Notes: generated by a model not told the origin, from the sequence alone. Shown: positions 10,199 through 32,353, counted from the first letter of the stretch. The stretch is 64,000 bases of DNA from IMGVR_UViG_3300042562_001598:186001-250000, one strand, 5' to 3'. Numbers and translations: made by a program.

Positions 10199-10211
10199 AA
10201 ACATAGAAATC

Positions 10212-10726: not shown

Positions 10727-10735
10727 TTAGAATAA

Positions 10736-10807: not shown

Positions 10808-10823
10808 CAAATTTAGAAAATAT

Positions 10824-10930
10824 CCTTCTGTAGTTTAACAAGAGCAAAACACAGAGACGAATACATCTCCCTACGGTAACCATCCCAAGAATGTATTAAG
10901 AGTATGTGGGTTCAACTCCCACTGGAAGGG
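10824..10930 (+). ncRNA. tRNA-like RNA with enlarged core
   Basis: CCTTCTG/TGGAAGG acceptor, D-arm, GTGGG TTCAACT CCCAC T-arm; ~55-nt core. Confidence 0.65.
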
Positions 10931-10979
10931 CAAATCATAGGAGTAATTACCTTATGACTGAGAGATTCGAAGCTCTCGA

Positions 10980-11079
10980 TTGATTATGGTGTAAAGGCGC
11001 ACGGTAGAAGGTAGTAGGTCCGAATTATGCGAGACCGAGGGTGGAAACAGGATTAAGGTTCGAATCCTTATTAGTCAGC
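10980..11079 (+). ncRNA. tRNA-like RNA with enlarged core
   Basis: TTGATTA/TAGTCAG; TAAGG TTCGAAT CCTTA T-arm; no anticodon arm. Confidence 0.6.
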
Positions 11080-11086
11080 AAAATAA

Positions 11087-11204
11087 AGTCAGGTGGCGGA
11101 ATTGGTAGACGCAACATGGTATGGCAATACAGAGGGTGATAGTATAAGTCCTATCAGTGGTAAGTGACCTCTCTTATAACAGGTTCGAATCCTTGTCCTG
11201 ACTA
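11087..11204 (+). ncRNA. AGTCAGG-family tRNA-like RNA, copy 2
   Basis: Leu-type D-arm GGCGGAATTGGTAGACGC; ~65-nt two-hairpin core. Confidence 0.8.
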
Positions 11205-11229
11205 CAAATTTAAAATAAAAATAAAAATT

Positions 11230-11316
11230 ATGAAAAGAAAAGACGTTTACGTTTGTGTTTGTGATGGTAGTTGTACTAGTCCAGAGGATTGTTCACCAAT
11301 TAAGTCAAAACGATAA
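11230..11316 (+). CDS. Cys-rich micropeptide (28 aa)
   Basis: MKRKDVYVCVCDGSCTSPEDCSPIKSKR, A-rich start context. Confidence 0.45.
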   Translation: MKRKDVYVCVCDGSCTSPEDCSPIKSKR

Positions 11317-11323
11317 TAAAAAT

Positions 11324-11448
11324 AGTCAGGTGGCGGAAAACGAGGTATGCCAATAGGGTGTAGCCCGCAAGCAAGACGCTAATTGTAGTAAGTGTACTCA
11401 TACGACATATAATCGGTACACATACAGGTTGGAATCCTGTTCTGACTA
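11324..11448 (+). ncRNA. AGTCAGG-family tRNA-like RNA, copy 3
   Basis: Same ends; insertion in D-loop plus GTGTAC/GTACAC core hairpin. Confidence 0.75.
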
Positions 11449-11569
11449 ATAAATAGTAGAAACAACATCCCCCCAGTTTCTTGGTCTGTGCACGGATAGG
11501 ATTTGTAAGGGGGTTGAGATTGGATGACGTTTATCTTTTGTAATCCAACAATAAACAGAAAAAGATGTT

Positions 11570-11703
11570 AGTCAGGTGGCGAAAGGAGTGGGGTGTCCCT
11601 GCTCGTGGTAGACGCACACCTTTATGGTTAAAGCGGAGTGTGAAGTATAAACACACCATACAGTTAACAGTATGAATTACGGGTTCGAATCCTGTCCTGA
11701 CTA
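11570..11703 (+). ncRNA. AGTCAGG-family tRNA-like RNA, copy 4
   Basis: Same ends; hairpin inserted in D-loop; multi-hairpin core. Confidence 0.8.
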
Positions 11704-11782
11704 CGATTGCTGAGGAACGGTCCAGAGTAGTGGAATTATAGTTAAATTCAATACGTTGACAGCTTGGAAAGACAAGCAAAAC

Positions 11783-11884
11783 AGTCAGGTGGCAGAGTGG
11801 TTTAATGCTAACTAGGGAGAGTCTGAGGGTGGTAACCTAGTACCTATACCCATATGACCGCAGGTTCGAATCCTGTCCTGACTA
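11783..11884 (+). ncRNA. AGTCAGG-family tRNA-like RNA, copy 5
   Basis: Ser-type D-arm GGCAGAGTGGTTTAATGC; ACTAGG/CCTAGT stem with ~19-nt loop. Confidence 0.8.
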
Positions 11885-11893
11885 CAAATACAA

Positions 11894-12015
11894 GGTTCCT
11901 GAGATAAAGGATTAGCTTAGCACTAACTAACTAAATACTTAAACTCCAGCATAACGGTTTGCTACCCCAGTTAGTGATGGTGGTGGAAAGATAGGTTCAA
12001 CTCCTATAGGGACTA
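11894..12015 (+). ncRNA. tRNA-like RNA with long core
   Basis: GGTTCCT/AGGGACT; ATAGG TTCAACT CCTAT; CACTAACT/AGTTAGTG core stem. Confidence 0.6.
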
Positions 12016-12088
12016 CAAAGCTGACAACCTAGTGATTGATGTGTGAAGCTAACACATAAGTTGTTGACTGATGGAAAGACATCAAAAT

Positions 12089-12173
12089 AGTCAGGTGGTG
12101 AAATGGATAGACACTACCCTGTTTGGGGGAGAGGTGAAAGAAACTCGTACAGGTTCGAATCCTGTCCTGACTA
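12089..12173 (+). ncRNA. AGTCAGG-family tRNA-like RNA, copy 6
   Basis: Class-II-like shape but the anticodon arm has no canonical 7-nt loop. Confidence 0.8.
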
Positions 12174-12183
12174 CAAAATAATT

Positions 12184-12253
12184 GGTCTTGTTGGTCGAAG
12201 CGGCCGGTAAGTCTGCAAAACTTACGGAGGGGGTGCAATACCCTCCAAGACCT
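12184..12253 (+). tRNA. tRNA-Cys(GCA)
   Basis: GGTCTTG/CAAGACC, U73; loop CTGCAAA. Confidence 0.8.
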
Positions 12254-12321
12254 CAAAAGTTTAACAATTTGGTAGATACCGGTGATAATCACCGGTAAGT
12301 AAGGAAAATATAAATTAGAAA

Positions 12322-12517
12322 AGTTTAACACCTCGATGGTTGTCTGTAACCAACATATGAAACAGAATAGGCGTGTTGATAGTGGTAAGCCTCGCTAATT
12401 GTAACCGATTAAGTTCAAAGGAAGATAAGGACTAGTACGCCTGTGACGAACACGACGAATTCAGGATTTCCCATAGTAGCCCCGTTACAAACCAGAGTGC
12501 CGCAGAGGTGTTAAATT
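12322..12517 (+). ncRNA. Rod-shaped ~196-nt RNA, 6S-RNA-like architecture
   Basis: 13-bp terminal stem; TGGTT/AACCA and TGTAAC/GTTACA stems; central bubble; ATAGGCGT/ACGCCTGT closing stem. Confidence 0.5.
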
Positions 12518-12538
12518 TTTTTTAATATATTTATCAAT

Positions 12539-12922
12539 ATGAAAAAATTTGTAATTACAGAAGAAGAAAAAGACGATATATTAAACCAACATAACGAAAT
12601 GATGGATAAACCAAAACTTCCGGAAAATAGAAGAATGTTAGATTTGGATATAACTCCAATGAGTTTAAAAAAATTTAAGTCTCAAGGTCTTACACCATAT
12701 TACTATGATGGTGATACTGATATTATTGAAATGAAAGGTCCAATTAAAGGTAAAGTATATAATACAAAACCAAAAGAAGTTTTCTTATTAACATCTGATG
12801 AATATGATAAGATTAAACAATTATCAGATAAAATTAAGGAAATGATTGAACTTAAATTATACACTATTAAACTATATAAGGAATACCTCCCATCTAGTTT
12901 AATTAAAATTGTGGAAAAATAA
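12539..12922 (+). CDS. Leader-family cargo protein
   Basis: MKKFVITEEEKDDILNQH leader; TATTTAT upstream. Confidence 0.7.
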   Translation: MKKFVITEEEKDDILNQHNEMMDKPKLPENRRMLDLDITPMSLKKFKSQGLTPYYYDGDTDIIEMKGPIKGKVYNTKPKEVFLLTSDEYDKIKQLSDKIKEMIELKLYTIKLYKEYLPSSLIKIVEK

Positions 12923-12983
12923 AAAAAATATTCTAAAAAGTTTGTGGATATTAGAAAAAGAGTTATCTTTGTCAAAGAAAATA

Positions 12984-13115
12984 AGTCTTAGCCGAAAAGA
13001 CTGAGCACAAAACTAGAGTTTGTGTAGGAATACATCTAAAGATGGTGGCTAAGTGGGTCTCTTGGATACACCCGACCAAGCGTAAGGCGACAACACGTTA
13101 GGGAAAGCTGTCGTA
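12984..13115 (+). ncRNA. Unknown structured RNA with its own promoter and terminator
   Basis: TATCTTTG at 12964; several hairpins; terminator AACCCCCAA/TTGGGGGTTTT at ~13121-13146. Confidence 0.55.
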
Positions 13116-13220
13116 ATACTAACCCCCAACTATAATTGGGGGTTTTATAAAAAAAATTAAAAATACTTTACACTTTAGTGAATTAGTATATATTTATTAG
13201 AAATAACAATAAAACAACAA

Positions 13221-13295
13221 ATGAAAAATCTAAACATATCACTTACAATAGCGGCAACTGAGGGTAGAGATACAACTTGGATGTTGATGGTATGA
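13221..13295 (+). CDS. Putative leader peptide 2 (24 aa)
   Basis: MKNLNISLTIAATEGRDTTWMLMV followed by terminator 13318-13354, upstream of the second tRNA cluster. Confidence 0.5.
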   Translation: MKNLNISLTIAATEGRDTTWMLMV

Positions 13296-13415
13296 AATAT
13301 ATTTAACTAAAAATATTAAAAAATCCATCTTCAAAAAAAAGGTGGATTTTTTTTTATGTGTTGTTGTTATAATCAAATATTATCCTTATCTTTGTTAAAA
13401 GAAATTATAAAAAAT

Positions 13416-13592
13416 ATGAAAGATACAAAAACTAACCAGGAGGTTACATTAAACGAAGAATTGGTGATGGAGTATTCACCAATATTAGGAACAACATACA
13501 CATTAAAACCAGTTGAGTGGGATGAAGACCACGCGTTTAGTTTAGTTCTAAATGATATCCTTGATGATTTGGATATTGATGAGTTAAAATAG
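13416..13592 (+). CDS. Small hypothetical protein
   Basis: Start moved to MKDTK after TATCTTTG. Confidence 0.5.
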   Translation: MKDTKTNQEVTLNEELVMEYSPILGTTYTLKPVEWDEDHAFSLVLNDILDDLDIDELK

Positions 13593-13601
13593 TAATACAA
13601 T

Positions 13602-13673
13602 GGCCCGGTCGTCTAAAAGTTAGGACCTCACATTTTCATCGTGAAAACCGGGGAGCGTTACCCCGTCGGGCTA
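13602..13673 (+). tRNA. tRNA-Glu(UUC)
   Basis: GGCCCGG/TCGGGCT; loop TTTTCAT; T-loop AGCGTTA. Confidence 0.8.
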
Positions 13674-13696
13674 CGAAAGATATAAAATAAATTCAC

Positions 13697-13776
13697 GCGG
13701 TTGTGAAAGATATAGGTGAATGTCGGGTTCGATTCCCGGCAACCAGGACGGTTCGACTCCGCTGGTGCTGGCCGCA
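13697..13776 (+). ncRNA. Double-T-arm tRNA-like RNA
   Basis: Two tandem TTCGA(T/C)T hairpins closed by GCGGTT/GGCCGC. Confidence 0.55.
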
Positions 13777-13807
13777 ATATACTATTTCATTTTTTATATC
13801 TTTAATT

Positions 13808-13879
13808 GGGGCTATCGTATAAAAGCTATTACAATGGTTTTGCAAATCATAGAACACGGAGCGTTACCGTGTAGCTCCA
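13808..13879 (+). tRNA. tRNA-Ala(UGC)
   Basis: GGGGCTA/TAGCTCC with G3:U70; loop TTTGCAA; T-loop AGCGTTA. Confidence 0.88.
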
Positions 13880-13946
13880 CAAAAAAAACAAAAATAAGTT
13901 TGATTATTAAAATAATATAACTTAAATTTGTAGAGAATAAAAACAA

Positions 13947-14017
13947 AGTCTAGTAGTGAAAAAGAATCATCCAACACTGTCACTGTTGAGTAGCCGGAGC
14001 ATTACCGGTCTAGACTG
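13947..14017 (+). tRNA. tRNA-Asp(GUC)
   Basis: AGTCTAG/CTAGACT, G73; loop CTGTCAC; T-loop AGCATTA. Confidence 0.82.
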
Positions 14018-14034
14018 CAAAATAAATAATACAT

Positions 14035-14105
14035 CGCGGGAAGCTAAGTAGCAGTCGGGTCTCATAAGCCATGATGTGTAGTAGGAGCGTTACCTTCTCC
14101 CGCAA
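14035..14105 (+). tRNA. tRNA-fMet(CAU), divergent
   Basis: C1:A72 mismatch; loop CTCATAA; weak anticodon stem; T-loop AGCGTTA. Confidence 0.65.
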
Positions 14106-14127
14106 CTAATTTAATAAATAATTAACT

Positions 14128-14301
14128 ATGGCTACAGCACCGCAAAAATCAAGAAAACAAAGAGCTTTAAGTGTTCTTGAAACACAATTAAGTAATTCAG
14201 TTAAAACTGAAAAAGGAACAACAGATGTTAAAATTCCTCTAACTGAAGCAGATGTTAAGAGAATTAAAAAAGAAATTGAAATCTTAAAAACAAGAGTTTA
14301 A
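14128..14301 (+). CDS. Small basic protein (57 aa)
   Basis: MATAPQKSRKQRALSVLE...VKRIKKEIEILKTRV; phage-like codon usage. Confidence 0.6.
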   Translation: MATAPQKSRKQRALSVLETQLSNSVKTEKGTTDVKIPLTEADVKRIKKEIEILKTRV

Positions 14302-14310
14302 TTTAGTTCC

Positions 14311-14382
14311 GCGGGTGTCGTATAATGGTCATTACAATTGACTTCCAATCAATAGACGAGATTTCGATTATCTCCATCCGCT
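14311..14382 (+). tRNA. tRNA-Gly(UCC)
   Basis: GCGGGTG/CATCCGC, U73; loop CTTCCAA. Confidence 0.88.
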
Positions 14383-14570
14383 CTTTCTCAGAGAATTACG
14401 ACGAAAACTGGGTTTTAGCCCCTGTTATAACACCACCAAGATACTCTAGCAATTCCGGATTAGTTAGGTTGCGGTGATAAGGAAATAAGTCGGGTATAGC
14501 TAACCAAAAAGACGAAAACCTTGTAGTGGATTATGGTGACGCTCCATAGCAGTAAATCTCTTATTATAAT

Positions 14571-14640
14571 AATTGGGTAGCTCAGTGGATAGAGCAGTCA
14601 ATATATTGATGTGCCGGTGGTTTGATTCCACCCCCAATTA
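14571..14640 (+). ncRNA. tRNA-like RNA with collapsed anticodon loop
   Basis: AATTGGG/CCCAATT; canonical D-arm; GTCAA-TATA-TTGAT arm with a 4-nt loop. Confidence 0.65.
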
Positions 14641-14644
14641 TAAC

Positions 14645-14719
14645 ACCCCCATGGGCAAACTGGTAAAGTCGCTTCACTTAGGATGAAGAGTTCTGTGAGT
14701 TCAACTCTCACTGGGGGTA
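14645..14719 (+). tRNA. tRNA-Leu(UAG) with short variable arm
   Basis: ACCCCCA/TGGGGGT; loop CTTAGGA; TTCAACT. Confidence 0.8.
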
Positions 14720-14723
14720 CAAA

Positions 14724-14793
14724 TTAGAATTAGCTTATAGTAAAGCGGCAGGAGTTTAACTTACTGCATAACGGATTCCAACACCGGTTCTAA
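14724..14793 (+). ncRNA. Degenerate tRNA-like element
   Basis: TTAGAAT/GTTCTAA acceptor and D-arm; irregular anticodon and T arms. Confidence 0.4.
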
Positions 14794-15376
14794 TTTTTTA
14801 TAAAATAAAATAGGTTTATAAGTATAGATTTTATATATTTGTTAAAATAAACATAACCCAGTAGATAGGTCCGCCAAGAAAGTCTTTAAACAACGTGGGA
14901 ACTGCGGCTCTCCCAATGTGGCTGGAATGTTTTAATAAAAGGCTGAACATCGAACCTTTGTAATAGACTATAAAAGGTCTTTAAGACGTAGTATTGTAAT
15001 AAATATTATGCTTTACATAAAGATATCAACAGAGATGTTGAATGCGTTGTTCCCTTGAGAAAGGAAAATAGAGTGGCTACAAGGTTGTTGCAACAACTAG
15101 TAAAGACTAACGCAAATGAGCTCTCAGCAAGCAACCTGTTTGGGTTCATCCAGCAGCTGCGTGACCCTACTCTTATACAAGCTCCGTAACTGATAACTCG
15201 GCAAGCTATAAGAAAGGGTGCTAAATAAAAACTACTTGAGTAAGTGGGGGTGGTCAATCAACAACCCATTGAAGTTTCAGGTGAATATATAGACAGGATT
15301 GGTGAGTCTATATAAGTAAGTAACAAGTTAATGTGTTTTTAGAAAGATTGAATAGTTTTTAACATTGGCGAAAAAT

Positions 15377-15460
15377 AGTCAGGTGACGTAATGTAAACGT
15401 TATGGTGCAAGTCCATTTCAACTCAAGTGAGTAATATAGGTGCGAATCCTGTTCTGACTA
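15377..15460 (+). ncRNA. AGTCAGG-family tRNA-like RNA, copy 7
   Basis: Same acceptor; core contains a second T-loop-like hairpin ATGG-TGCAAGT-CCAT. Confidence 0.75.
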
Positions 15461-15676
15461 CAATGAGTAAGAGATACTCAGAAGTCTTTAATCCAAGACT
15501 TTTTAACAATGGATTGGGTAATGAATTGGACATCCTCAAAGCCAATTCCTTGGGTGAAAGACAGGTAGTAGCGTCTCCAAGTAAACTTGACTTTTTTGTT
15601 TGGGTAAGACCGTCTTCGTTTTTGAAAGGATAAAACGAGTAATATCTACACCGAAATATCTCATCGGTGGTTTTTT

Positions 15677-15748
15677 GGTCTCGTAGCTCAAAGGTGGAGC
15701 AGTTCGCTCATAACGAAAAGGATGGGATATCGTAATTCCCCGAGACCA
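15677..15748 (+). tRNA. tRNA(CAU): elongator Met or Ile2
   Basis: GGTCTCG/CGAGACC; loop CTCATAA; atypical T-loop ATCGTAA. Confidence 0.8.
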
Positions 15749-15872
15749 CAAATTATCCCCCCTTTGTGTTCTATCACATCGGCCAACCTCCAGGGAAACT
15801 TGGGGGTTTTTTTAAAAAATATTATGTGAAACTTAAATATAATTTATTTATATTTGTAAAAAGAAAATAAGT

Positions 15873-21334: not shown

Positions 21335-22210
21335 ATCGGGAATAACCGATATCGTTCTTTGAGAAAACAGATTATCCATTATAATACTTCGGTATTGTAA
21401 AAAACGATAATGGGCGGCTTATAGTCCTTATATAAATTGATGAAAATCAATATAAAGTGAATCTGTTGTGTTAACAGATTTGCGGTTTCAGAAATGGAAC
21501 TCAAGTAAGCAAGCAGGATACTATATAATCTTGATTACCGAGGCCAACGGTGTAGGGAAAGTGATTATATAACTGGGTGATGTGGGTCATCTGGTTGAGG
21601 GGGGAACTCTAATAGGAATAACCTGTAGGATTTGTGCAAAAAATATGATTATCCAATTATATTATTGCGACTTCCAAAATTAAAGGAAACTTAAAACCGA
21701 AAGGTATGACAACAAACAGGTGGTGCTGAAATTGTCCTTGATACTTATCTACCAAGGTAAATATCTCGAAGTAGTCTTGAAATTTGAGAGTAGGGATACT
21801 CTAAGATGAAGTTAAGTATTCTGATGTCCAAAAGATATCGGAGCTTGGGGTAAACCACTTCGTCTATTCATCCACAACACAATACCTTATACTTTATTTA
21901 AGTAAAACTAAAAAAATGTAAGCAAAAGTGTTTACCACTATGAAACGGAAGTTGCCCACATATTCACTGGCTGTCAGTGGAACGTAATAACCGCAAGTTT
22001 GACCGTATTTTTATGAAAAATCTCTAAGCCGTCGGAAGCTGAATCAGGACGCAATCTTGATGAGACAGGAGTAGTAAGAGAGTAGTTTCATAGTTAAGGG
22101 GTGATTGGTCTAACCAATCGGCAATGAGAAATACTAATCAAAAGTTAGTGGAAAAGTAGGGAAACCATAATCCTATGAAAGGTTCTTAAAATTAAAGTTT
22201 ATTCTCAGCT
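21335..22210 (+). ncRNA. Giant structured ncRNA (~870 nt), candidate GOLLD-class
   Basis: ORF-free; own TATCTTTG promoter and terminator (~22238-22274); many hairpins with UUCG/GNRA loops; family identity not verified. Confidence 0.7.
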
Positions 22211-22285
22211 TTTTTTATTTTTTATCAAAACATACAGAAAATCCTTTAACAAAATAATGTTAAAGGATTTTTTTGTTAATTGATA

Positions 22286-22306: not shown

Positions 22307-22717
22307 ATGAAAAATTTATTTAATGACATTTCTCAAGAAGAGAAAAATAGAATCCTTGAGATGCACTCGGGTAAAAAAAATGTGATATCTGAACAAGAAA
22401 TTGGTGGTTACAAAGAAGGACCTGGTGACCCTCAAGGTGATGAACTTGACCACTATAATAAAATTGTAAAACCAAAATTGTTAGCTGTAGGTTTTAAAGA
22501 TGAATATGATAAAAATTTAAAACAATTTGGCACGGAGAATTCTTTAACTTATGGTGGACACAATAACGGTGTTAATGTCCTATGGGATAGAATAAAAGGG
22601 GTTTATCATGTGTGGGCCGGAAATGATAAGGGAAAACGACAATTCCAACTTGGTCCAAATGACCCAAAAGTTGTCGCTAATAAAGTTGTTCAGTACGCTT
22701 TATCATTAAAGAGATAA
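22307..22717 (+). CDS. Leader-family cargo protein
   Basis: MKNLFNDISQEEKNRILEMHSGKKNVISEQ leader identical to that of 26412. Confidence 0.75.
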   Translation: MKNLFNDISQEEKNRILEMHSGKKNVISEQEIGGYKEGPGDPQGDELDHYNKIVKPKLLAVGFKDEYDKNLKQFGTENSLTYGGHNNGVNVLWDRIKGVYHVWAGNDKGKRQFQLGPNDPKVVANKVVQYALSLKR

Positions 22718-22788: not shown

Positions 22789-23241
22789 ATGAAAAAAGAA
22801 ATCAACATAGTCAATAAGAAAGCGAAACACGAATACGAGTTTTTACAGACTTACGTATGCGGCGTTAAGCTAATCGGTTGTGAAGTAAAATCAATACGCC
22901 TAGGTAAGGTTTCCATATCCGAGGGGTATTGTTACTTCAACAATAACGAATTATTCATTAAAGGAATGAACATATCTGATTATGGTTACGGCACAGTCCA
23001 TGATAACACCTCAGATAGAAAGTTATTATTAAAACGGAAAGAGTTAAACAAATTAGAAAAAGAACTCGTAAAAGGCCTTACAATCGTTCCTTACAGGGTC
23101 TTTACAAATGAGAGAGGATTGATTAAAATAGAGATATCCCTATCTCGTGGTAAAAAGAACTACGATAAAAGAAATGACCTAAAGTCCAGGGATATTGATA
23201 GAGATAGTAAAAGAGAAATTAGTGGTCGGTTCACAAAATAA
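22789..23241 (+). CDS. smpB: SsrA-binding protein
   Basis: NKKAKHEY, GVKLIGCEVKSIR, RKLLL, RGKKNYDKR. Confidence 0.95.
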   Translation: MKKEINIVNKKAKHEYEFLQTYVCGVKLIGCEVKSIRLGKVSISEGYCYFNNNELFIKGMNISDYGYGTVHDNTSDRKLLLKRKELNKLEKELVKGLTIVPYRVFTNERGLIKIEISLSRGKKNYDKRNDLKSRDIDRDSKREISGRFTK

Positions 23242-23265: not shown

Positions 23266-23571
23266 ATGGTAGATTTAATGTCATTAGCGTTAGGGGTAGT
23301 TGCAGTTCTTATTGTATTGGGGGTTGTGATTATGTTTTATGCTGTCAATCAAGTTTTTTTACTTAAAAAAAAGTTTGGTTATTTAGAAAAAGAAACACAA
23401 GATAATTATAACTTCTTACATAGAAGGATTAACGAATCAGAAATAAGTTCAGAACAAATGGTTATGCGGTCACACAATCATATTGATGAGGTTGAAAAAC
23501 AATTAATAAGTATGATTGACTCCAGGTTGGATAAACTGGAAAATAAAATAATCCAAAAACAAGTATTATAA
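23266..23571 (+). CDS. Membrane-anchored coiled-coil protein
   Basis: N-terminal TM; IDSRLDKLENK. Confidence 0.6.
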   Translation: MVDLMSLALGVVAVLIVLGVVIMFYAVNQVFLLKKKFGYLEKETQDNYNFLHRRINESEISSEQMVMRSHNHIDEVEKQLISMIDSRLDKLENKIIQKQVL

Positions 23572-23676
23572 ATAAACGAACCGACCATTAATTACACCCC
23601 TCTTCACCGGAGGGGTTTTTTATTACCCATACTTAAGTATTAACCAAAAAAAAATGAGACCCGAAGGTCTCATTGC

Positions 23677-24063
23677 TGGTGGAGATGCCGGGATTTGAAC
23701 CCGGGTCTTGCCCATCCTAAAGATTAAGGACTACACGCTTAGGTCAACATTTTTCTAATGTTCCGAAAATAGTTAGTTCGTTCTTCACCATTGTAAACTA
23801 ACAACCAATGGATGACTCGATTTCGGGTTCAGTCATTTTTCCACCTTTGTAAGACCTTATGTTCCTGGGTTATATGGTTACCGACCCGTTGTTGTTCAAC
23901 TAATTAAGCTGTAACAACTTCTTCAGAGCGGATTAATCCTACTGCTGAAAGTTTTGCGATTGTTTCGCCGTTTGAATTTTGTGACCATAGATTTAAGTGA
24001 TAGGAAACTTCTCACTGCGTGCCCCCAATAAATAGCAATGCCAATCAATACCATTTCATCCCC
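23677..24063 (-). ncRNA. ssrA: tmRNA
   Basis: GGGGATG/CATCTCC-ACCA with G3:U70; T-arm GGTTCAAATCC; tag ORF GETIAKLSAVGLIRSEEVVTA* at 23969-23904. Confidence 0.92.
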
Positions 24064-24144
24064 CATTGTTTTATTATACTACAAATATATATGATTATTT
24101 ATTAATAATCAAATATAGAGTATATTTATTAATAAATATTTTTT

Positions 24145-25500
24145 ATGGCTGATATAGATAATAGTAAAAACAACGCATACGAAGGAACTCGTATTATTGT
24201 AAATACTGAAGACTTAATGTTTTTGGAGGTTTTAGCTCCGGATTCTTTAGGTTATTTTGGACTTGATTGGGTTAAGAACCGATATGATAGATTTAGAGAT
24301 GGTAATTTATATTTAATTGTTGATAAGAGAGAACTCCCTGTAAATGTTAAAGTATTATATACTGACACTGATGGTGAATTTTTCGGATATTATCAATCTG
24401 GGGATACTATAAAGTATTCTGAACTACTTTTAGAGTATCCTGAGTTAGTGGACCAAATAACAGCTTTAGAACCGGTGAGTGAAATATATGACGCATTACT
24501 TTCAATCTCTGAAGGACAGGAATTATCAAAATACAACCTTAGAAATATTGATGACTTAGTTAGTGATTTCAAATTTAACAAACGAAGTCCAAGGGCTAGT
24601 TCTGTTATGTTATCATTTGATGATGTTGATGATATTCTTGGGATATTTGATGTTAGTGAGGACGATAAGTGGTTTGTGGGAGCTGTAACATCTTATGATA
24701 GTTATGAATTTGAGTATTGGGATAATGTTCATGATGATTGGTTACAAGGGTATGGTTTAGACCATTTTAGTGGTGTCGAAAACGAAACTAGAATTGATAA
24801 TATTTTAAAAGTTATATTACCTGGTCATAGTATAAATACGAATGATGATGAGGAACGACAATTAATTTGCAATACTTTAGAGACTTTTTTCCCAAGTGAA
24901 ATTGAGGATGTTTTAGATACCTATATTCGTGAACAAAATTATTGTAAAACAAGAGGAACCTTAAAGGAAATAGAATCAGATGTTTCTAATTTATTTGAAC
25001 CATATAACATATTCAAAGTAGGTGAAGGGTATAATTATGTTACAAGTGTTAAAACTTTATTAAGTCTATATGAAAATGTGGGTTCTAAAAAATATACATT
25101 AAAAGAACTTTTAGCTGAAATTAATAAAGATACTGAAGTTGGTGGTTGGGCTGAATACATGTATGAAACAGAATGTGATGAGTTTGACCAAGTAACTATG
25201 GATAGAACTGTAAGTCAGGCTTTAGATTCTATGGAAGAAGGTTTAGAGGATTCTGATAAGTTTGAGGATATTGAGGAATTTAAAAAAATGGCGGATTTTA
25301 TTTTATCAAAATATGATTTAAATAGAAATTATGAAACACCTAAAGATAGTAATATCAGATTTACCATACATCAACTAGACCCCTCCGATAATTCTGTATT
25401 GGTTACGGTTAAAAACCTTGAGAAAAGAACTTCAGAAAAAAGAAGATTAGATTTGGAAGGGTTTAATAATTTATTAACTCAACAAGAATTATTTCAATAA
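24145..25500 (+). CDS. Acidic hypothetical protein
   Basis: 451-aa ORF. Confidence 0.7.
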   Translation: MADIDNSKNNAYEGTRIIVNTEDLMFLEVLAPDSLGYFGLDWVKNRYDRFRDGNLYLIVDKRELPVNVKVLYTDTDGEFFGYYQSGDTIKYSELLLEYPELVDQITALEPVSEIYDALLSISEGQELSKYNLRNIDDLVSDFKFNKRSPRASSVMLSFDDVDDILGIFDVSEDDKWFVGAVTSYDSYEFEYWDNVHDDWLQGYGLDHFSGVENETRIDNILKVILPGHSINTNDDEERQLICNTLETFFPSEIEDVLDTYIREQNYCKTRGTLKEIESDVSNLFEPYNIFKVGEGYNYVTSVKTLLSLYENVGSKKYTLKELLAEINKDTEVGGWAEYMYETECDEFDQVTMDRTVSQALDSMEEGLEDSDKFEDIEEFKKMADFILSKYDLNRNYETPKDSNIRFTIHQLDPSDNSVLVTVKNLEKRTSEKRRLDLEGFNNLLTQQELFQ

Positions 25501-25540: not shown

Positions 25541-26359
25541 ATGGAAAGAAATTATCAACTATTGAAAGATGTTTTATCGGTTCCGACTAAAACATATAAT
25601 GAAGGATTAATGGTGGAATTCATAACCAATTGGTTATCGGAGAATAACATCCCCTTCTATATTGACGAGTATCAAAATATTTACGCTACAAAACAAACTT
25701 TTGAGGTGGAATATTTCCCTTGTGTTATTGCACATACGGATACCGTTCATAACATTGACACTATCAATGTAAGAGAAGAAAATCTTAAAAACGCACAAGG
25801 TGAAATAAAACCTGCGTTAAAGGCTTATAATGATTTGGGTAATCCAACTGGTATTGGTGGTGATGATAAATGTGGCGTTTATGCTTGTCTTGAATTACTA
25901 AAAGAATTACCAAATCTAAAAGCTGGATTTTTCGTATCTGAAGAAACTGGATGTCACGGTTCTAAAAACGCGGACCCTGAATTTTTTAAGAATGTGGGGT
26001 ATGCTATTCAATTTGACGCTCCGGAGAACTGGATGGTTTCAGAATATTGTATGGGTGTTAAGTTATTTGATAGAGAGAGTGATTTCTTCAAGTCTTGTGA
26101 TTTTGTTATAAACGAAAACTTTAATGGTCGTCAATTATACCAAGCACATCCTTATACAGATGTTTATAAATTAAAACAGATTTTTAATTTTTCTTGTATT
26201 AATTTCTCAATCGGGTATTACGATTATCATACAAAATATGAATATGTAATTATTGAAGATGTTTATAGTGGTATTAAAACCGGGAAAGAAATGATTGAAA
26301 AACTAGGATATCAAAAATATACCTTAGAATACGAACAATCAACATATAACTTTTATTAA
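25541..26359 (+). CDS. M20/M28-family zinc peptidase
   Basis: AHTDTV, GGDDKCG, SEETG, terminal YH. Confidence 0.85.
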   Translation: MERNYQLLKDVLSVPTKTYNEGLMVEFITNWLSENNIPFYIDEYQNIYATKQTFEVEYFPCVIAHTDTVHNIDTINVREENLKNAQGEIKPALKAYNDLGNPTGIGGDDKCGVYACLELLKELPNLKAGFFVSEETGCHGSKNADPEFFKNVGYAIQFDAPENWMVSEYCMGVKLFDRESDFFKSCDFVINENFNGRQLYQAHPYTDVYKLKQIFNFSCINFSIGYYDYHTKYEYVIIEDVYSGIKTGKEMIEKLGYQKYTLEYEQSTYNFY

Positions 26360-26411: not shown

Positions 26412-27113
26412 ATGAAAAATTTATTTAATGACATTTCTCAAGAAGAGAAAAATAGAATACTTGAGATGCACTCAGGTAAAAAGAATGTAATTTCTGAACA
26501 AAATAGTCAACAAGTTTATAAAGAAATTGCGGATTATTTATATAATTCTATGAAAGGGTTAAGTTCCTCTGAGGATTCAGAAAATGTTGAAACAATTATA
26601 CTTAATAGAATAAAAAATAAAAATGATTGGGAAGGAGTTAAAAAGGCTTTTGGGGTAAAAGACGGTGAAAATTTGGAACAGTGGTTAAAAGGTGAACTTA
26701 GACTTGATTATAATGAAATAATGGGAATGATAAATCGAAATGACGGTAATTTTAAGAAAGAAGATTCAATGTATAATCCGGGGTCTAAAATTAGTTTAAT
26801 TACTAATAGACAGTTTCTTATGTCAAGAGCATATCAATATGCAAGTATTATGGGTGACAAAAAAGAATTAGAATTGGATATTAATAACGCAATAATTATT
26901 CGTAGAGATAAAGATGGGATAGTTATTAAAACTGATTATGTTGATTATTACCCAATTCCTGAATATACAAGAGGAAAATCTACACCAAAACAAGAAAGAT
27001 TAACAAAACCTTGTATAAAAATCCCTTTTAAAGATGTAATTGAATGGAGAGATGGTACTTTACAAATTAGATGGTTTTCTGATTTTGTTAAAAGTAGGGT
27101 AGTACCTTGTTAA
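26412..27113 (+). CDS. Leader-family cargo protein
   Basis: First 30 aa identical to 22307; unrelated thereafter. Confidence 0.75.
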   Translation: MKNLFNDISQEEKNRILEMHSGKKNVISEQNSQQVYKEIADYLYNSMKGLSSSEDSENVETIILNRIKNKNDWEGVKKAFGVKDGENLEQWLKGELRLDYNEIMGMINRNDGNFKKEDSMYNPGSKISLITNRQFLMSRAYQYASIMGDKKELELDINNAIIIRRDKDGIVIKTDYVDYYPIPEYTRGKSTPKQERLTKPCIKIPFKDVIEWRDGTLQIRWFSDFVKSRVVPC

Positions 27114-27142: not shown

Positions 27143-27655
27143 CTATTTGTCCTCTTTCCTTTTTCTTGTTTTCTTAGATGTCTCTTGGAGACTTAACTTC
27201 TTTTTCTACTGAAACAAGGGTATATAACACACCTTCCACCATATTTCCTTTGATAATCTCTTCGGATACAAAATCCTCAATCTTATCTTGGATTGTTCTT
27301 TTGATTGGTATAGCTTCGTAAGTCTCGTCAAATCCAACATCGGAAATCAAATGTAAAATAGTTTCATCAAATGTGATGTTATAGTTCAAACCAACTAATC
27401 TTTTTGATAACTTATCTAATTCCAATGTTACAATTTTTTTAACATCTTCCTTCACCAACGAATTAAAGATAACAACCTCATCAATTCTATTTAAGAATTC
27501 CGGAGTAAAGAATTTTTTAAGTTCTTTTTTAAGAATTTCTCGTTTGTATTCTTCTTCAGCATAAGAGTTATTACCGGTTTTAAATCCCACACCTGAACCA
27601 AAGTCTTGTAATTTTTTAACCCCCACATTTGATGTCATAATGATGACACAATTTT
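27143..27655 (-). pseudogene. 3' fragment of a second, divergent clpC allele
   Basis: NCVIIMTSN...PEFLNRIDE; GAR motif changed to EAI; frameshift separates the basic tail LQETSKKTRKRKEDK*. Confidence 0.8.
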
Positions 27656-28325: not shown

Positions 28326-29144
28326 ATGAAAAACTTATTTATACTAACCGAAGAAGAAAAAAATAGAATTTTAAATCTTCATGAAAGTGCCACAAAACGA
28401 CATTATTTAGTTGAACAAGAAATAAAACAAGGACCTGAAGGTGACCCATATCAATATAAAAAAATTGGTGACGAATATTTTTACGCTAAGAAAAATGACG
28501 ACAATTGGACTAAAGTTAATAACCCTAAAGGTATTACAGATATCAAAAATACTATTTTTAATTCATCAATAAATAAATTAACAACTCAAAAACCTGAAGC
28601 TTATTTATTATTTGATGGTACTAATTTAAATTGGATTGAGAATGGTAAAGTTATTAAACGATGGTCAGCAATTTCAGGAAGAACTAAATTTAATACTTTT
28701 GGTGATAAAAATTTGGAGAAATTAGTTAAAAAATATGGGGCTAATAGGATGGAATTTATGAAAATTAAAGACCAAGGTCCTATACCTGTTGGTGAATATT
28801 CTATAGGTCAAGTACAAAAACGAACAAATGGTGACGCTCAAAGATTTATACAAGGTAAAACGGATAAAGAGTTACAACGTATTATGTTACAAAATGTTAA
28901 ACACGATTGGAATTTAGGAACAGAAACTGATATGGTTGCTTGGGGTAATTACAGATTACCAATAACTAAAGTTGGTGAAACTGAAACTTTTGGTAGAGGT
29001 AGTTTTTACATTCATGGTGGTGGTATTCCAGGTTCTATTGGTTGTATTGATTTATTAACTCAAATGGATGATTTCGCAAACTATTTCACAAATTGGAAGA
29101 ATAAAACAAAAAAAAATAAATTAAAATTAGTTGTTAAGTATTAA
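28326..29144 (+). CDS. Leader-family protein with Tlde1/DUF2778 L,D-transpeptidase-like domain
   Basis: Leader ...EEKNRILNLHESATKRHYLVEQ; GPIPVGEY; RGSFYIHGGG..GSIGCI. Confidence 0.75.
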   Translation: MKNLFILTEEEKNRILNLHESATKRHYLVEQEIKQGPEGDPYQYKKIGDEYFYAKKNDDNWTKVNNPKGITDIKNTIFNSSINKLTTQKPEAYLLFDGTNLNWIENGKVIKRWSAISGRTKFNTFGDKNLEKLVKKYGANRMEFMKIKDQGPIPVGEYSIGQVQKRTNGDAQRFIQGKTDKELQRIMLQNVKHDWNLGTETDMVAWGNYRLPITKVGETETFGRGSFYIHGGGIPGSIGCIDLLTQMDDFANYFTNWKNKTKKNKLKLVVKY

Positions 29145-30101: not shown

Positions 30102-32153
30102 TTATTCGTCCCCTTTTTTCTTTCTACCTCTTTTCAAAGGTTCTTTATTTTTAGTTATAATAACTTCTTTATCTACAACATCAACCACACTTGAGTCCCC
30201 CTCGTTAATTTCACCTTTCAAAATCTCTTCAGAGATGAAGTCTTCAATTTTATCTTGAATAGCTCTTTTAATAGGTCTTGCTCCATAGTTTTCATCATAA
30301 CCAACATCAGATATCAATTCAGTTACTTTATCGGTATAACTAAAGTTATATTTGATTTTAGCAAGACGACCCATTAGTTTATCTAATTCTAAAGTAACAA
30401 TCTTTTTAACATTCTCTTTATCTAAAGATTTAAACATAATAACATCATCAATTCTGTTTAAGAATTCAGGCGCGAAGAATTTTTTAAGTTCAGCTTTAAG
30501 GATATCGTTTTTAAGTTCTTGTTCAATATATTCGTTACCACCATTTTTAAATCCAACACCAGTTCCGAAGTCTTGTAATTTTTTAACACCTAAATTAGAT
30601 GTCATAATGATAAGACAGTTTTTAAAGTTAATTTTTTTACCTAAAGAGTCAGTTAAGTGACCTTCATCTAACATTTGTAAAAGTGTTGAGAAGATATTTT
30701 TATCCGCTTTTTCAATCTCATCAAATAAGATAACAGAGTAAGGTTTATTTTTAACTTCATTAGTTAAGAATCCACCTTCTTCGTGGGCAACATAACCTGG
30801 AGGAGAACCTATAAGTCTTGAGATTGTATGTTTTTCTTGATATTCTGACATATCAATTCTAATCATATTTTCTTCACTACCAAAAATTTCTTTTGCTAAT
30901 TGTTTTGCTAAATAAGTTTTTCCTACTCCGGTAGAACCTAAAAAGATGAATGAACCAATTGGACGATTTGGGTCTTTAATACCTAATCTATTTCTTCTGA
31001 TAGCTTTTGCGATTTTAACCACGGCTTCAGGTTGACCAACAACTTTATCAGCTAAAGCTTGTTCTAAATTAACTAATGCTTTAGTATCGTCAATTGATAA
31101 TTTTGATACAGGTATTTTAGTCATATTAGATACAACTTCATATACTAGTTCTTCAGGAATTTCTCTTTTATGAGCTTGTAATTCCGCTTCAAATTTTATT
31201 TTTTCATCCTCTAATTTTGATAGAATTCGTTTTTCTTTATCTCTAAGATTAGCCGCTTCTTCATAGTTTTGTTTTTTAACTACCTCAATTTTTTCCAATT
31301 TAATATCTGACGCTTGTTGTTTTAATTTTTCAATTATTTCAGGCATCTTAATATCAACTTGACTTCTCGCACCAACTTCGTCTAAAATATCAAAAGCTTT
31401 ATCCGGGAATTCTCTGTCGGTAATGTATCTATCCGCTAAATCAACACAAATTTCTAAAATAGAATCAGTGTAATTTACTTTATGATATGATTCATATTTT
31501 TCTTTAGCGTTTTTCAAGATGATTAATGTTTCTTCTTTTGTTGCAGAATCAACAATAACCTTTTGAAATCTTCTTTCTAATGCTCCGTCTTTTTCAAAGT
31601 TTTTTCTATATTCATCTAAAGTTGTTGCTCCAACACATTGGATTTCACCTCTTGCTAAAGCTGGCTTAAAGATGTTTGACGCATCCATTGACCCGGATGA
31701 ATTTCCCGCACCAACAATGGTGTGAATCTCATCAATGAATACAATTATGTTTGGAGAGTTTTGTAACTCCTCAATAATAACTTTCATTCTTTCTTCAAAT
31801 TGTCCACGGTATTTTGTTCCTGCAACAATGGATGTCATATCTAAAGATACGATTCTTTTATCCATTAAGTTTCTTGGACAATCCCCATTATATATTTTAA
31901 TTGCAAGACCTTCAACGATTGCAGTTTTACCACAACCAGGTTCACCTAATATAATAGGATTATTTTTCTTTCTACGAGAAAGAATTTGAGCAATCCTAGT
32001 GATTTCTCTTTCACGACCAACTACAGGGTCTAATTTACCTTCTTCAGCTAACTTTATTAAGTCTCTACTAAAGTTATCTAATACAGGTGTTGTTGATTCT
32101 GAGATGGAATTTGATTTTTTTCCTTTTTCGTCATTATCTGAAAATTCTATCAT
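30102..32153 (-). CDS. clpC: ClpC-like AAA+ unfoldase lacking the N-terminal Clp-repeat domain
   Basis: Walker A motifs GEPGCGKT and GSTGVGKT; FIDEIH; UVR M-domain QNYEEAANLRD; GARP. Confidence 0.92.
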   Translation of the reverse strand: MIEFSDNDEKGKKSNSISESTTPVLDNFSRDLIKLAEEGKLDPVVGREREITRIAQILSRRKKNNPIILGEPGCGKTAIVEGLAIKIYNGDCPRNLMDKRIVSLDMTSIVAGTKYRGQFEERMKVIIEELQNSPNIIVFIDEIHTIVGAGNSSGSMDASNIFKPALARGEIQCVGATTLDEYRKNFEKDGALERRFQKVIVDSATKEETLIILKNAKEKYESYHKVNYTDSILEICVDLADRYITDREFPDKAFDILDEVGARSQVDIKMPEIIEKLKQQASDIKLEKIEVVKKQNYEEAANLRDKEKRILSKLEDEKIKFEAELQAHKREIPEELVYEVVSNMTKIPVSKLSIDDTKALVNLEQALADKVVGQPEAVVKIAKAIRRNRLGIKDPNRPIGSFIFLGSTGVGKTYLAKQLAKEIFGSEENMIRIDMSEYQEKHTISRLIGSPPGYVAHEEGGFLTNEVKNKPYSVILFDEIEKADKNIFSTLLQMLDEGHLTDSLGKKINFKNCLIIMTSNLGVKKLQDFGTGVGFKNGGNEYIEQELKNDILKAELKKFFAPEFLNRIDDVIMFKSLDKENVKKIVTLELDKLMGRLAKIKYNFSYTDKVTELISDVGYDENYGARPIKRAIQDKIEDFISEEILKGEINEGDSSVVDVVDKEVIITKNKEPLKRGRKKKGDE

Positions 32154-32353
32154 ATTATTATTATTATTTTGTTTTGTTAATGATATCAATAATTATAACA
32201 AAAATTATTCTATGAATCAATATTGACAATTTGTCAGTATATTTTTTTATAAAATGTCAAATTGTCATATAAATAAGTCATTTTACTATAAATTTGACTT
32301 TGGTATAAAATTAGTTATAATTATTTCAAATAAAAAATTAAAACAAAAAAATT

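What the first reader, a model, noticed from the sequence alone, without database searches (positions are those of the whole stretch)
23904..23969. Phage tmRNA with a non-host-like 21-aa tag
Seen: tag (A)GETIAKLSAVGLIRSEEVVTA*. Established: Bacteroidota tags are typically short, start GE and end ALAA, the ClpXP degron. This one keeps GE, is about twice as long and ends VTA. Inference: rescued proteins are redirected away from host ClpXP, or towards the phage's own ClpC.
Basis: partly seen in the sequence, partly recalled or inferred. Interest (0 to 1): 0.65.

Follow-up and report, generated by a model that had tools for sequence, protein, structure and literature searches.

The report
Jumbo-phage tmRNA with its own tag
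A 282-kb lake phage carries its own ribosome-rescue RNA (tmRNA) and partner protein SmpB, and the RNA encodes a conserved 21-residue tag unlike any tag in the likely host phylum, so the phage may mark and dispose of unfinished proteins through its own Clp protease.

Summary
Window 24063..23677 (minus strand) is a full-length tmRNA (Rfam 83 bits), and the frame GGC…GCT TAA at 23969..23904 encodes GETIAKLSAVGLIRSEEVVTA.

- **Frame:** it is fixed by the Rfam alignment, by ARAGORN calls on three relatives, and by about 40 related phage loci. These hold 23 distinct coding versions and 17 peptides. Only this frame is open, there is an in-frame 3-nt indel, and invariant residues switch between synonymous codons.
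- **Expression:** contigs from four lake metatranscriptomes cover the tmRNA but not its neighbouring genes.
- **Genome context:** the phage also encodes SmpB next to the tmRNA, a ClpC-type unfoldase lacking the N-terminal domain 6 kb away, and a genuine ClpP outside the window. This ClpC-like gene accompanies this tmRNA family in 12 of 12 records checked.
- **Comparison tags:** 71 cellular tmRNAs from the phylum of the nearest cellular SmpB all have tags of 8–10 residues ending LAA or MAA.

"GE" occurs only in one subclade; most relatives start GN or GD. The penultimate residue also varies: the window ends VTA, a close relative VAA, and others VVA, NVA or TVA.

Routing of tagged proteins to the phage ClpC/ClpP is plausible but inferred, not shown. 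I class this as a new variant of a known kind.

The parts
23677..24063 (-). tmRNA (ssrA) gene, one-piece, 387 nt, with the 3' CCA encoded
   Evidence: Rfam RF00023 gives 83.4 bits over the full model. The acceptor stem keeps an invariant G3:U pair and has compensatory changes at pairs 4, 5 and 7. The T arm, helix 2 and PK1 covary across 26 distinct relatives. Contigs from four metatranscriptome runs lie inside 23738-24063 only.
23904..23969 (-). Tag reading frame: 21 codons plus TAA, encoding GETIAKLSAVGLIRSEEVVTA. Resume codon GGC at 23969-23967.
   Evidence: This is the only open frame in all relatives. There is an in-frame AAC insertion in one subclade. Invariant G1, G11 and L12 and near-invariant R14 and last Ala (22 of 23 each) switch between synonymous codons. 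An A at -4 of the resume codon is kept in the 32 sequences.
23653..23674 (-). Intrinsic terminator hairpin followed by a T run, starting 3 nt after the CCA end
   Evidence: 9-bp stem followed by TTTTTTT.
24082..24117 (-). Two TATATTTG (TAnnTTTG-type) motifs 19 and 47 nt upstream of the mature 5' end; possible promoter
   Evidence: The motif is not enriched across the window (122 found, 110 expected), so this is a weak hint only.
22789..23241 (+). Phage SmpB (150 aa), the protein partner of tmRNA
   Evidence: Pfam SmpB 161.7 bits; NCBIfam equivalog 157 bits against a cut-off of 130. It is adjacent to the tmRNA in 31 related loci.
30102..32189 (-). ClpC-type double-AAA+ unfoldase lacking the N-terminal Clp_N domain. 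It has the UVR/M linker, both Walker B motifs, the pore loops, and a GVGF ClpP-docking loop.
   Evidence: aligns to S. aureus and B. subtilis ClpC residues about 140-800, 729 bits. It is present in 12 of 12 records that carry this tmRNA family.
27174..27638 (-). 154-aa stand-alone paralogue of the ClpC C-terminus: sensor-1 TSN, GVGF loop and D2-small domain
   Evidence: 66% identical to residues 529-676 of the full ClpC-like protein. Conserved at about 77% identity in 8 related loci. Its role is unknown.
21804..22211 (+). GOLLD RNA, directly upstream of the smpB-tmRNA pair
   Evidence: Rfam RF02032, 273 bits. The same position is kept in 11 of 16 related loci scanned.
24145..25500 (+). 451-aa protein of unknown function, transcribed divergently from the tmRNA
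   Evidence: Conserved as the tmRNA's neighbour in 24 loci, including one where the pair is inverted. No family hit. The AF2 model has pLDDT 87 but no fold match.
25541..26359 (+). Peptidase-like protein (phrog_4191; weak M42 aminopeptidase match)
   Evidence: Conserved at 74% identity in 22 related loci.

Best explanation
The locus is a working, phage-encoded trans-translation system.

**Proposed sequence of events**
1. The tmRNA is transcribed as its own unit, ending at its own terminator. It is presumably charged with alanine through its G3:U pair.
2. The phage SmpB delivers it to stalled ribosomes.
3. Translation resumes at GGC and adds AGETIAKLSAVGLIRSEEVVTA to the unfinished protein.

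**The tag.** It belongs to a lineage-specific family with the consensus G-[NED]-[VIT]-[LIF]-x-K-[ML]-x-x-[VIL]-G-L-[ILV]-R-x-x-E-[VLA]-x-[VTA]-A. The family is under selection at the peptide level and shares nothing with host-type tags beyond the terminal Ala.

**Most likely function.** The tag is a private degradation signal read by the phage's own protease, which is the ClpC-type unfoldase lacking the N-terminal domain together with the phage ClpP. This would make rescue and disposal of truncated proteins during infection independent of the host ClpXP pathway.

**Shown:** the tmRNA, the frame, conservation of the tag, the presence of SmpB, ClpC-like and ClpP genes, and RNA-library coverage of the tmRNA.

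**Inferred:** that the tag is a degron, that phage ClpC/ClpP is its reader, and that it escapes host ClpXP.
For: **tmRNA and frame**
- Rfam match and resume codon.
- Covariation in the acceptor stem, T arm, helix 2 and PK1.
- Frame evidence.

**Expression**
- Contigs from four metatranscriptome studies lie only inside the tmRNA gene. One departs from the genome sequence exactly at the predicted 5' end, 24063.

**Protein partners**
- SmpB is complete and adjacent.
- The only ATP-dependent protease parts found in the genome are the ClpC-like gene and ClpP. No Lon, FtsH, ClpX, SspB or ClpS was found.
- The ClpC-like protein has the motifs an active unfoldase needs, including a GVGF ClpP-docking loop. 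ClpP has its Ser-His-Asp triad.
- The tmRNA family and this ClpC-like gene co-occur in 12 of 12 records. They lie within about 6 kb in the window and 2.5 kb in G155.

**Comparison tags**
- Host-phylum tags are all 8-10 aa ending [LM]AA.
- A Prevotella megaphage (Lak-B5) has a short tag ending MAA, so a long divergent tag is not simply what megaphages of Bacteroidota do.

**Precedents**
- ClpC1, including a version lacking its N-terminal domain, unfolds SsrA-tagged protein (PMC6274998).
- The long Mycoplasma tag co-evolved with Lon (PMC8403727).
Against: - There is no direct evidence that the tag is a degron or that ClpC reads it.
- The co-occurrence comes from one phage lineage, so it reflects shared ancestry rather than repeated independent association.
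- The hydrophobic C-terminus with a terminal Ala, and VAA in L140, could still be accepted by host ClpXP, ClpAP, Lon, FtsH or Tsp.
- ClpC enzymes commonly need adaptors, and none was found.
- The host is inferred rather than known. The evidence is a nearest cellular SmpB of 44-46% identity in two Bacteroidota MAGs, and nearest phage homologues in megaphages predicted to infect Bacteroidetes.
Confidence: 0.5

Rival explanations
1. The tmRNA and SmpB simply add ribosome-rescue capacity. Tagged proteins are degraded by host proteases (ClpXP, ClpAP, Lon, FtsH or Tsp) through the hydrophobic C-terminus ending in Ala. The phage ClpC/ClpP has other substrates, and the conserved middle of the tag binds a host adaptor or serves as a Lon-type signal.
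For: The terminal Ala is kept in 22 of 23 coding versions, and the preceding residues are mostly Val or Ala. One relative ends VAA. Host Lon and FtsH are known to take ssrA-tagged proteins, and Lon prefers long hydrophobic tags (PMC8403727).
Against: No member of the family has the [LM]AA ending seen in 71 of 71 tags from the host phylum. It is unclear why a 21-22-residue tag with the internal K[ML]xx[VIL]GL[ILV]R core would be conserved across the lineage if a 9-residue host-type tag works, as it apparently does in Lak-B5.
Confidence: 0.3
2. The tag is not a degradation signal. Rescue is the selected function, and the conserved peptide does something else, such as binding a phage factor, sequestering the products, or marking them for another fate.
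For: The internal residues G11, L12 and R14 are at least as conserved as the C-terminal end. The penultimate residue is free to vary among T, A and V.
Against: Every characterised tmRNA tag known to me acts as a degron (my own knowledge of the field, not a tool result). The near-invariant terminal Ala with a non-polar C-terminus fits that pattern. I found no amphipathic-helix signal and no similar peptide elsewhere in the phage proteome.
Confidence: 0.15
3. The element is a decaying or non-functional copy, for example a captured host ssrA or an attachment-site remnant, and the ORF is meaningless.
For: The Rfam score is lower than that of every intact cellular tmRNA in the sample (83 bits against 93-198). 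ARAGORN misses it.
Against: The gene is full length, with compensatory base-pair changes across 26 distinct relatives. The frame is conserved. A dedicated SmpB sits beside it. It has its own terminator. RNA-library contigs cover it selectively.
Confidence: 0.03

Closest known systems
Cellular tmRNA/SmpB trans-translation with ClpXP-type ssrA tags (here, the Bacteroidota-type tags such as GENNYALAA)
   Same: One-piece tmRNA with a tRNA-like domain, G3:U pair, PK1, internal ORF and stop. SmpB is the partner. The first tag residue is Gly and the last is Ala.
   Different: The tag is 21-22 aa rather than 8-10. No [LM]AA ending appears anywhere in the family. The tag has a conserved internal K[ML]xx[VIL]GL[ILV]R core that cellular tags lack. 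The system is encoded by a virus.
tmRNA and SmpB genes reported in huge phages (Al-Shayeb et al. 2020, PMC7162821) and the 2.3% of phage genomes with tmRNA (Buchholz et al. 2022, PMC9004378)
   Same: Phage-borne tmRNA, sometimes with SmpB. The nearest phage SmpB and ClpC-like homologues (44-58% identity) are in those megaphages.
   Different: Both surveys detected tmRNAs with ARAGORN, which misses 29 of 32 members of this family. The passages I read in those papers do not analyse tag peptides or link them to phage Clp genes.
Megaphage G: tmRNA with tag AKLNITNNELQVA plus its own ClpP and ClpX (PMC12484599)
   Same: A very large phage carrying both a tmRNA with a non-canonical tag ending in VA and its own Clp protease.
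   Different: Different host type, a shorter and unrelated tag, and ClpX rather than a ClpC lacking the N-terminal domain. No SmpB is mentioned. That paper also leaves the tag-protease link untested.
Mycoplasma ssrA tag (27 aa) recognised by Lon (Gur and Sauer 2008, as cited in PMC8403727)
   Same: A long, divergent tag that co-evolved with a protease other than ClpXP. This is the clearest model for how the present system might work.
   Different: The Mycoplasma case is cellular and experimentally shown. Here the proposed protease is ClpC/ClpP and nothing has been tested. The phage has no Lon.
Prevotella megaphage Lak-B5 tmRNA
   Same: A tmRNA of a large phage assigned to a Bacteroidota host, in a genome that also encodes SmpB.
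   Different: My reading of its tag is DDEIEFRMAA: short, with a host-like MAA ending (ARAGORN did not call it).
ClpC / ClpC1 unfoldases of Firmicutes and Actinobacteria
   Same: Both AAA+ rings, a short M domain with UVR motif, a ClpP loop, and about 58% identity to S. aureus ClpC. ClpC1 lacking its N-terminal domain still unfolds SsrA-tagged substrate (PMC6274998).
   Different: The whole N-terminal Clp_N domain, which binds adaptors and phospho-arginine, is missing in every member of this phage lineage examined (ORFs of 680-712 aa).

Membership tests
tmRNA (Rfam RF00023) | Score above the curated gathering threshold over the full model | tested here: met
   83.4 bits against 47, model positions 1-374. 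Relatives score 50-105 bits. Two relatives (L012, L017) fall below the threshold.
tmRNA (Rfam RF00023) | tRNA-like domain: 7-bp acceptor stem with a G3:U70 alanine identity pair, T arm, and 3' CCA | tested here: met
   G3:U is present in 26 of 26 sequences. Pairs 4, 5 and 7 and the T arm show changes on both sides. CCA is encoded in the window.
tmRNA (Rfam RF00023) | Pseudoknot PK1 just upstream of the resume codon, and a conserved upstream A | tested here: met
   PK1 stem 1 (alignment columns 49-53 with 65-69) and stem 2 (60-62 with 79-81) pair in 23-26 of 26 sequences, with covariation. An A at -4 is kept in the 32 sequences.
tmRNA (Rfam RF00023) | Internal open reading frame ending in a stop codon and translated as a tag | tested here: met
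   The frame is conserved, with synonymous codon changes and an in-frame indel. Translation itself is not testable here.
tmRNA (Rfam RF00023) | The RNA is made | tested here: inconclusive
   Contigs from four RNA libraries cover only the tmRNA part of a 1.5-kb stretch. Contigs cannot prove transcription or strand, but the uncovered flanks argue against DNA carry-over.
Canonical ClpXP-type ssrA degron | C-terminal [LMV]AA-COOH | tested here: not met
   The window ends VTA. The family ends VVA, AVA, NVA or TVA, with one member ending VAA and one TVS. All 71 cellular comparison tags end LAA or MAA.
SmpB (PF01668 / TIGR00086) | Full-length match above the curated cut-offs, with the basic C-terminal tail | tested here: met
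   161.7 bits (Pfam) and 154-157 bits (NCBIfam equivalogs). The DKRxxIKxRDIDRDxKR tail is present.
ClpC (class I Clp/Hsp100 unfoldase that docks on ClpP) | Two AAA+ modules, a short M domain with UVR motif, and a [LIV]-G-[FL] ClpP loop | tested here: met
   AAA, AAA_lid_9, UVR, AAA_2 and ClpB_D2-small domains are present. Motifs seen: GVGF loop, Walker B DEIH and DEIE, pore loops KYRG and GYVA.
ClpC (class I Clp/Hsp100 unfoldase that docks on ClpP) | N-terminal Clp_N repeat domain, the adaptor-binding site | tested here: not met
   The alignment to ClpC starts at residue about 140 of ClpC. Only about 30 residues precede D1. The same holds in the 10 relatives searched.
ClpP (PF00574), as opposed to a ClpP-like prohead protease | Full-length ClpP match with the Ser-His-Asp triad and no fused scaffold | tested here: met
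   217 bits to the ClpP equivalog against 64-72 bits to head-maturation models. About 45% identity to solved ClpPs. S, H and D align. All NCBIfam scores are below the equivalog cut-offs, so it is a divergent ClpP.

The most novel reading that the evidence does not exclude
This lake jumbo-phage lineage runs a private, orthogonal protein quality-control circuit. Its own tmRNA and SmpB write a tag that only its own adaptor-free ClpC-type unfoldase and ClpP read, so the phage controls the fate of truncated proteins independently of the host. The GOLLD RNA that is conserved immediately beside smpB and the tmRNA, and the stand-alone ClpC C-terminal paralogue carrying the ClpP-docking loop, would be further parts of the same translation and proteolysis module.
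Probability: 0.25. Interest if true: 0.8.

Novelty: new variant of a known kind. Interest (0 to 1): 0.55.

Why it matters
Phage tmRNAs are known, but their tags have hardly been studied.

- **A matched tag-protease pair in a virus.** This would show that phages can take over the last step of translation quality control as well as tRNA supply. It would also provide a natural degron-protease pair orthogonal to ClpXP, which is useful for synthetic biology in the way the Mesoplasma Lon tag has been.
- **Under-counted phage tmRNAs.** The standard detector ARAGORN misses about 90% of this abundant family, so published counts of phage tmRNAs are underestimates.
- **A lead on GOLLD RNA.** Its conserved placement beside smpB and the tmRNA is a new contextual clue to a large RNA whose function is still unknown.

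Tried and rejected
- **DNA similarity to known phages.** blastn of the tmRNA and of 5 kb of flank against 50,697 phage records found no match.
- **Similarity to cellular tmRNAs.** nhmmer against 71 cellular tmRNAs gave only weak matches to the tRNA-like part, so it says nothing useful about origin.
- **Bacteroidota promoter motif as a host marker.** TAnnTTTG is not enriched (122 found against 110±10 expected).
- **Protein atlas search with SmpB.** The taxonomic signal was uninformative.
- **Word search with SmpB.** The best 120 hits all belong to the phage clade, so there is no host signal.
- **Conserved hairpin inside the tag ORF.** RNAalifold predicts none.
- **Amphipathic helix in the tag.** The hydrophobic moment is no better than for shuffled sequences.
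- **Tag-like peptide elsewhere in the phage proteome.** None found.
- **Known adaptors and alternative rescue factors or proteases.** SspB, ClpS, RF-1/ArfB, Lon and FtsH are all absent from the genome.
- **Small ORFs as candidate adaptors.** ORF 23266-23571 is a poorly conserved membrane/coiled-coil protein. ORF 22307-22717 shares only a 30-aa N-terminal module with its relatives.
- **The 451-aa divergent neighbour of the tmRNA.** It folded confidently (pLDDT 87) but matched nothing in PDB or BFVD.
- **LR756501 tmRNA candidate.** It scores only 21 bits and I did not rely on it.
- **Complex prediction.** Not used. The tag is shorter than the 30-residue minimum, and a ClpC hexamer exceeds the size limit.
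- **The count of structure pairs.** A formal run for PK1 was left out because it would need a long typed structure string. Pair counts come instead.

Full report
**What the window is.**
The window is bases 186,001-250,000 of a 282,192-bp IMG/VR virus record. CheckV estimates it 96% complete, and it is 30% G+C. The same DNA is found in lake-water metagenomes from at least 14 studies.

The window holds a cluster of 13-15 tRNA genes, a GOLLD RNA and a tmRNA. It has no nucleotide-level relative among 50,697 deposited phage genomes.

**The observation.**
- Rfam's tmRNA model matches 24063..23677 on the minus strand end to end (83.4 bits, gathering score 47).
- ARAGORN does not call it.
- The minus-strand frame starting at GGC (23969-23967) reads GETIAKLSAVGLIRSEEVVTA, followed by TAA at 23906-23904.
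- The Rfam alignment puts the consensus resume codon on this GGC.
- The gene ends in an encoded CCA. Three bases further on there is a 9-bp hairpin and a T run. The tmRNA is therefore its own transcription unit, running opposite to its neighbours.

**Is the frame real?**
The phage SmpB gene (below) led to 38 related IMG/VR loci with 68-100% protein identity, on contigs up to 322 kb. A tmRNA homologue lies beside smpB in 31 of them. A pattern scan and a contig look-up added more divergent members.

Across 23 distinct coding versions (17 peptides), the evidence for the frame is:
- Frame 0 is open in every version. Both other frames carry stops in all 19 of the 21-codon versions tested.
- One subclade has an in-frame AAC insertion.
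- pN/pS is 0.56, with a bootstrap range of 0.41-0.76.
- G1, G11 and L12 are invariant, and K6, R14 and the last Ala are kept in 22 of 23. Their codons nevertheless switch: GGA/GGC, GGT/GGA, TTA/CTT/CTC, CGT/CGC/AGA, GCT/GCC/GCG.
- The bases just upstream vary as RNA rather than as codons, but an A at -4 is kept in the sequences.
- ARAGORN recognises three of the relatives and reports the same frame.

The RNA itself is under structural selection:
- The G3:U pair is present in 26 of 26 distinct sequences.
- There are compensatory changes at acceptor pairs 4, 5 and 7, in the T arm, in helix 2 and in both stems of PK1.
- 21 of 49 predicted pairs show double changes.

**Expression.**
Contigs from four freshwater or lake metatranscriptome runs, each from a different study, were laid on a 1.5-kb stretch covering smpB, the tmRNA and the start of the next gene.
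- They fall almost only inside the tmRNA gene (23738-24063).
- The tag region is covered in all four runs.
- One contig is identical over 23890-24063 and leaves the genome sequence exactly at 24063, the predicted mature 5' end.

Contigs cannot prove transcription. The uncovered flanks, however, argue against DNA carry-over.

**The tag family.**
The consensus is G-[NED]-[VIT]-[LIF]-x-K-[ML]-x-x-[VIL]-G-L-[ILV]-R-x-x-E-[VLA]-x-(N)-[VTA]-A, 21 or 22 residues long.

Examples:
- GNILDKMSAIGLIRAEEVVVA
- GNVLNKMALVGLVRQDELVNVA
- GNVLDKMETLGLVRESEVTVA
- GETFAKLQAVGLLRTEEVAVA
- GETIAKLSAVGLIRSEEVVAA, from L140, whose SmpB is 86% identical to the window's

"GE" is confined to one subclade. The T in VTA sits at a position that is A or V in other members.

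The conserved features are the length, the internal K[ML]xx[VIL]GL[ILV]R core, an acidic patch, a Val-rich end and the terminal Ala.

**Comparison with the likely host phylum.**
A pattern-based scan found the nearest cellular SmpB proteins (44-46% identity) in two Bacteroidota MAGs.

The nearest phage homologues of SmpB and of the Clp ATPase (44-58% identity) are in the megaphages over 634 kb and the Lak phages. Al-Shayeb et al. predict these to replicate in Bacteroidetes (PMC7162821). The host assignment is therefore reasonable but indirect.

I extracted 71 tmRNAs from genomes of that phylum.
- ARAGORN tags are all 8-10 residues long.
- 38 end LAA and 33 end MAA.
- 13 start GE and 2 start GN.

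By my reading, the Prevotella megaphage Lak-B5 has a short tag with a host-like ending, DDEIEFRMAA. The long tag is therefore specific to this lineage, not a general habit of Bacteroidota megaphages.

**What else the phage brings.**
- **SmpB** (window 22789-23241) is complete, with its basic C-terminal tail.
- **A ClpC-type unfoldase** (window 32189-30102, 695 aa) lies 6 kb from the tmRNA. It aligns to S. aureus and B. subtilis ClpC from residue about 140 to the end (729 bits). It has both Walker B motifs, both pore loops, the UVR/M linker and a GVGF ClpP-docking loop, but no N-terminal Clp_N domain.
- **ClpP** lies outside the window, at about 167.3-168.0 kb of the record. It is about 45% identical to solved ClpPs, has an aligned Ser-His-Asp triad, and scores far better against ClpP models than against prohead-protease models.
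- **Absent:** Lon, FtsH, ClpX, SspB, ClpS and RF-1/ArfB domains.

The ClpC-like gene, always without the N-terminal domain, is present in all 12 records of this tmRNA family that I searched. Five of these are fragments only 15-46% complete. ClpP is present in the window's record and in all three complete relatives. In one complete genome the tmRNA sits 2.5 kb from clpC rather than beside smpB.

**Interpretation.**
I regard it as established that this is a functional phage trans-translation system with a lineage-specific tag.

The tag is probably a degron. To my knowledge every characterised tmRNA tag acts as one, and this tag has a non-polar C-terminus with a near-invariant terminal Ala.

Whether the phage ClpC/ClpP pair reads it is an inference from three things:
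- gene content;
- proximity of the genes;
- precedent. ClpC1 without its N-terminal domain still unfolds SsrA-tagged protein (PMC6274998). The 27-residue Mycoplasma tag co-evolved with Lon (PMC8403727). Megaphage G carries a tmRNA whose tag ends in VA together with its own ClpXP (PMC12484599).

Because all the co-occurrence comes from one lineage, it is not independent evidence. Degradation by host proteases remains a serious alternative.

**Novelty.**
Phage tmRNAs (2.3% of phage genomes; PMC9004378) and tmRNA plus SmpB in huge phages (PMC7162821) are already known.

What is new here:
- a well-supported, conserved and abundant family of long tags unlike host tags. SmpB of this clade forms more than 120 clusters at 90% identity, on contigs up to 326 kb;
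- its constant company with a ClpC lacking the N-terminal domain, and with ClpP;
- evidence of expression in nature;
- the finding that the usual detection tools largely miss the family.

I class it as a new variant of a known kind.

Noticed in passing
window 21804-22211 (+); also L017, L031, L024, L012, L014, L030, L041, L042, L044, L206: A GOLLD RNA (273-328 bits) sits immediately upstream of the smpB-tmRNA pair in the window and in 11 of 16 related loci. In some it ends about 75 nt before smpB. In L206 it lies 137 nt from the tmRNA. GOLLD is known to lie near tRNA genes (PMC6582537). A conserved GOLLD-smpB-tmRNA cluster did not turn up in my literature searches.
   Followed up: partly
window 27174-27638 (-): A 154-aa ORF is a paralogue (66% identity) of just the last 148 aligned residues of the phage ClpC-like protein. 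It starts at the sensor-1 TSN motif and includes the GVGF ClpP-docking loop and the D2-small domain. It is conserved at about 77% identity in 8 related loci, so it is not a decaying fragment. It could cap or compete for ClpP, but this is untested.
   Followed up: partly
tmRNA genes of L009-L046; L012 and L017: ARAGORN detects only 3 of 32 tmRNAs of this family. Rfam's gathering threshold misses at least two that nhmmer finds. Published censuses of phage tmRNAs that relied on ARAGORN therefore under-count this abundant lake-phage family.
   Followed up: yes
L178 12497-13082 (IMGVR_UViG_3300025617_000007): A group I intron (RF00028, 101 bits) abuts the point where the tmRNA homology breaks off near the 3' tRNA-like part. 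This relative probably has an intron-split tmRNA gene. Its tag reads GETFAKLQAVGLLRTEEVAVA.
   Followed up: no
window 8183-15749 (+): A cluster of tRNA genes. ARAGORN, including one with an unreadable two-base anticodon at 14570-14641, one tRNA-Phe(AAA) and one tRNA-Pro(GGG). Rfam adds three more that ARAGORN does not call (8996-9067, 13602-13673, 13808-13879).
   Followed up: no
window 24145-25500 (+): A 451-aa protein is always the divergently transcribed neighbour of the tmRNA (24 loci, including one with the pair inverted). It has no family match. Its confident AF2 model (pLDDT 87) has no fold match in PDB or BFVD.
   Followed up: yes
window 22307-22717 (+) and 26412-27113 (+); several ORFs in L018, L020, L024, L025, L046: Otherwise unrelated ORFs share a roughly 30-residue N-terminal module (MKNLFNDISQEEKNRILEMH...) at 76-100% identity. 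This suggests a common leader or targeting segment in this phage group.
   Followed up: no
window 25541-26359 (+) and 28326-29144 (+): Between the tmRNA and clpC lie two further genes of note. One is a conserved peptidase-like gene (phrog_4191, weak M42 aminopeptidase match). The other is an L,D-transpeptidase/Tlde1-like gene (YkuD 30 bits, Tlde1 34 bits).
   Followed up: no
L262 1501-1910 (Prevotella phage Lak-B5, MK250024.1 409798-410207); L267 (LR756501.1 718388-718731): Lak-B5 has a tmRNA just above the Rfam threshold (48 bits). ARAGORN misses it, and I read its tag as DDEIEFRMAA. The 735-kb phage LR756501 has only a 21-bit candidate, whose possible frame ends ...EDLVLA; this is unconfirmed.
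   Followed up: partly
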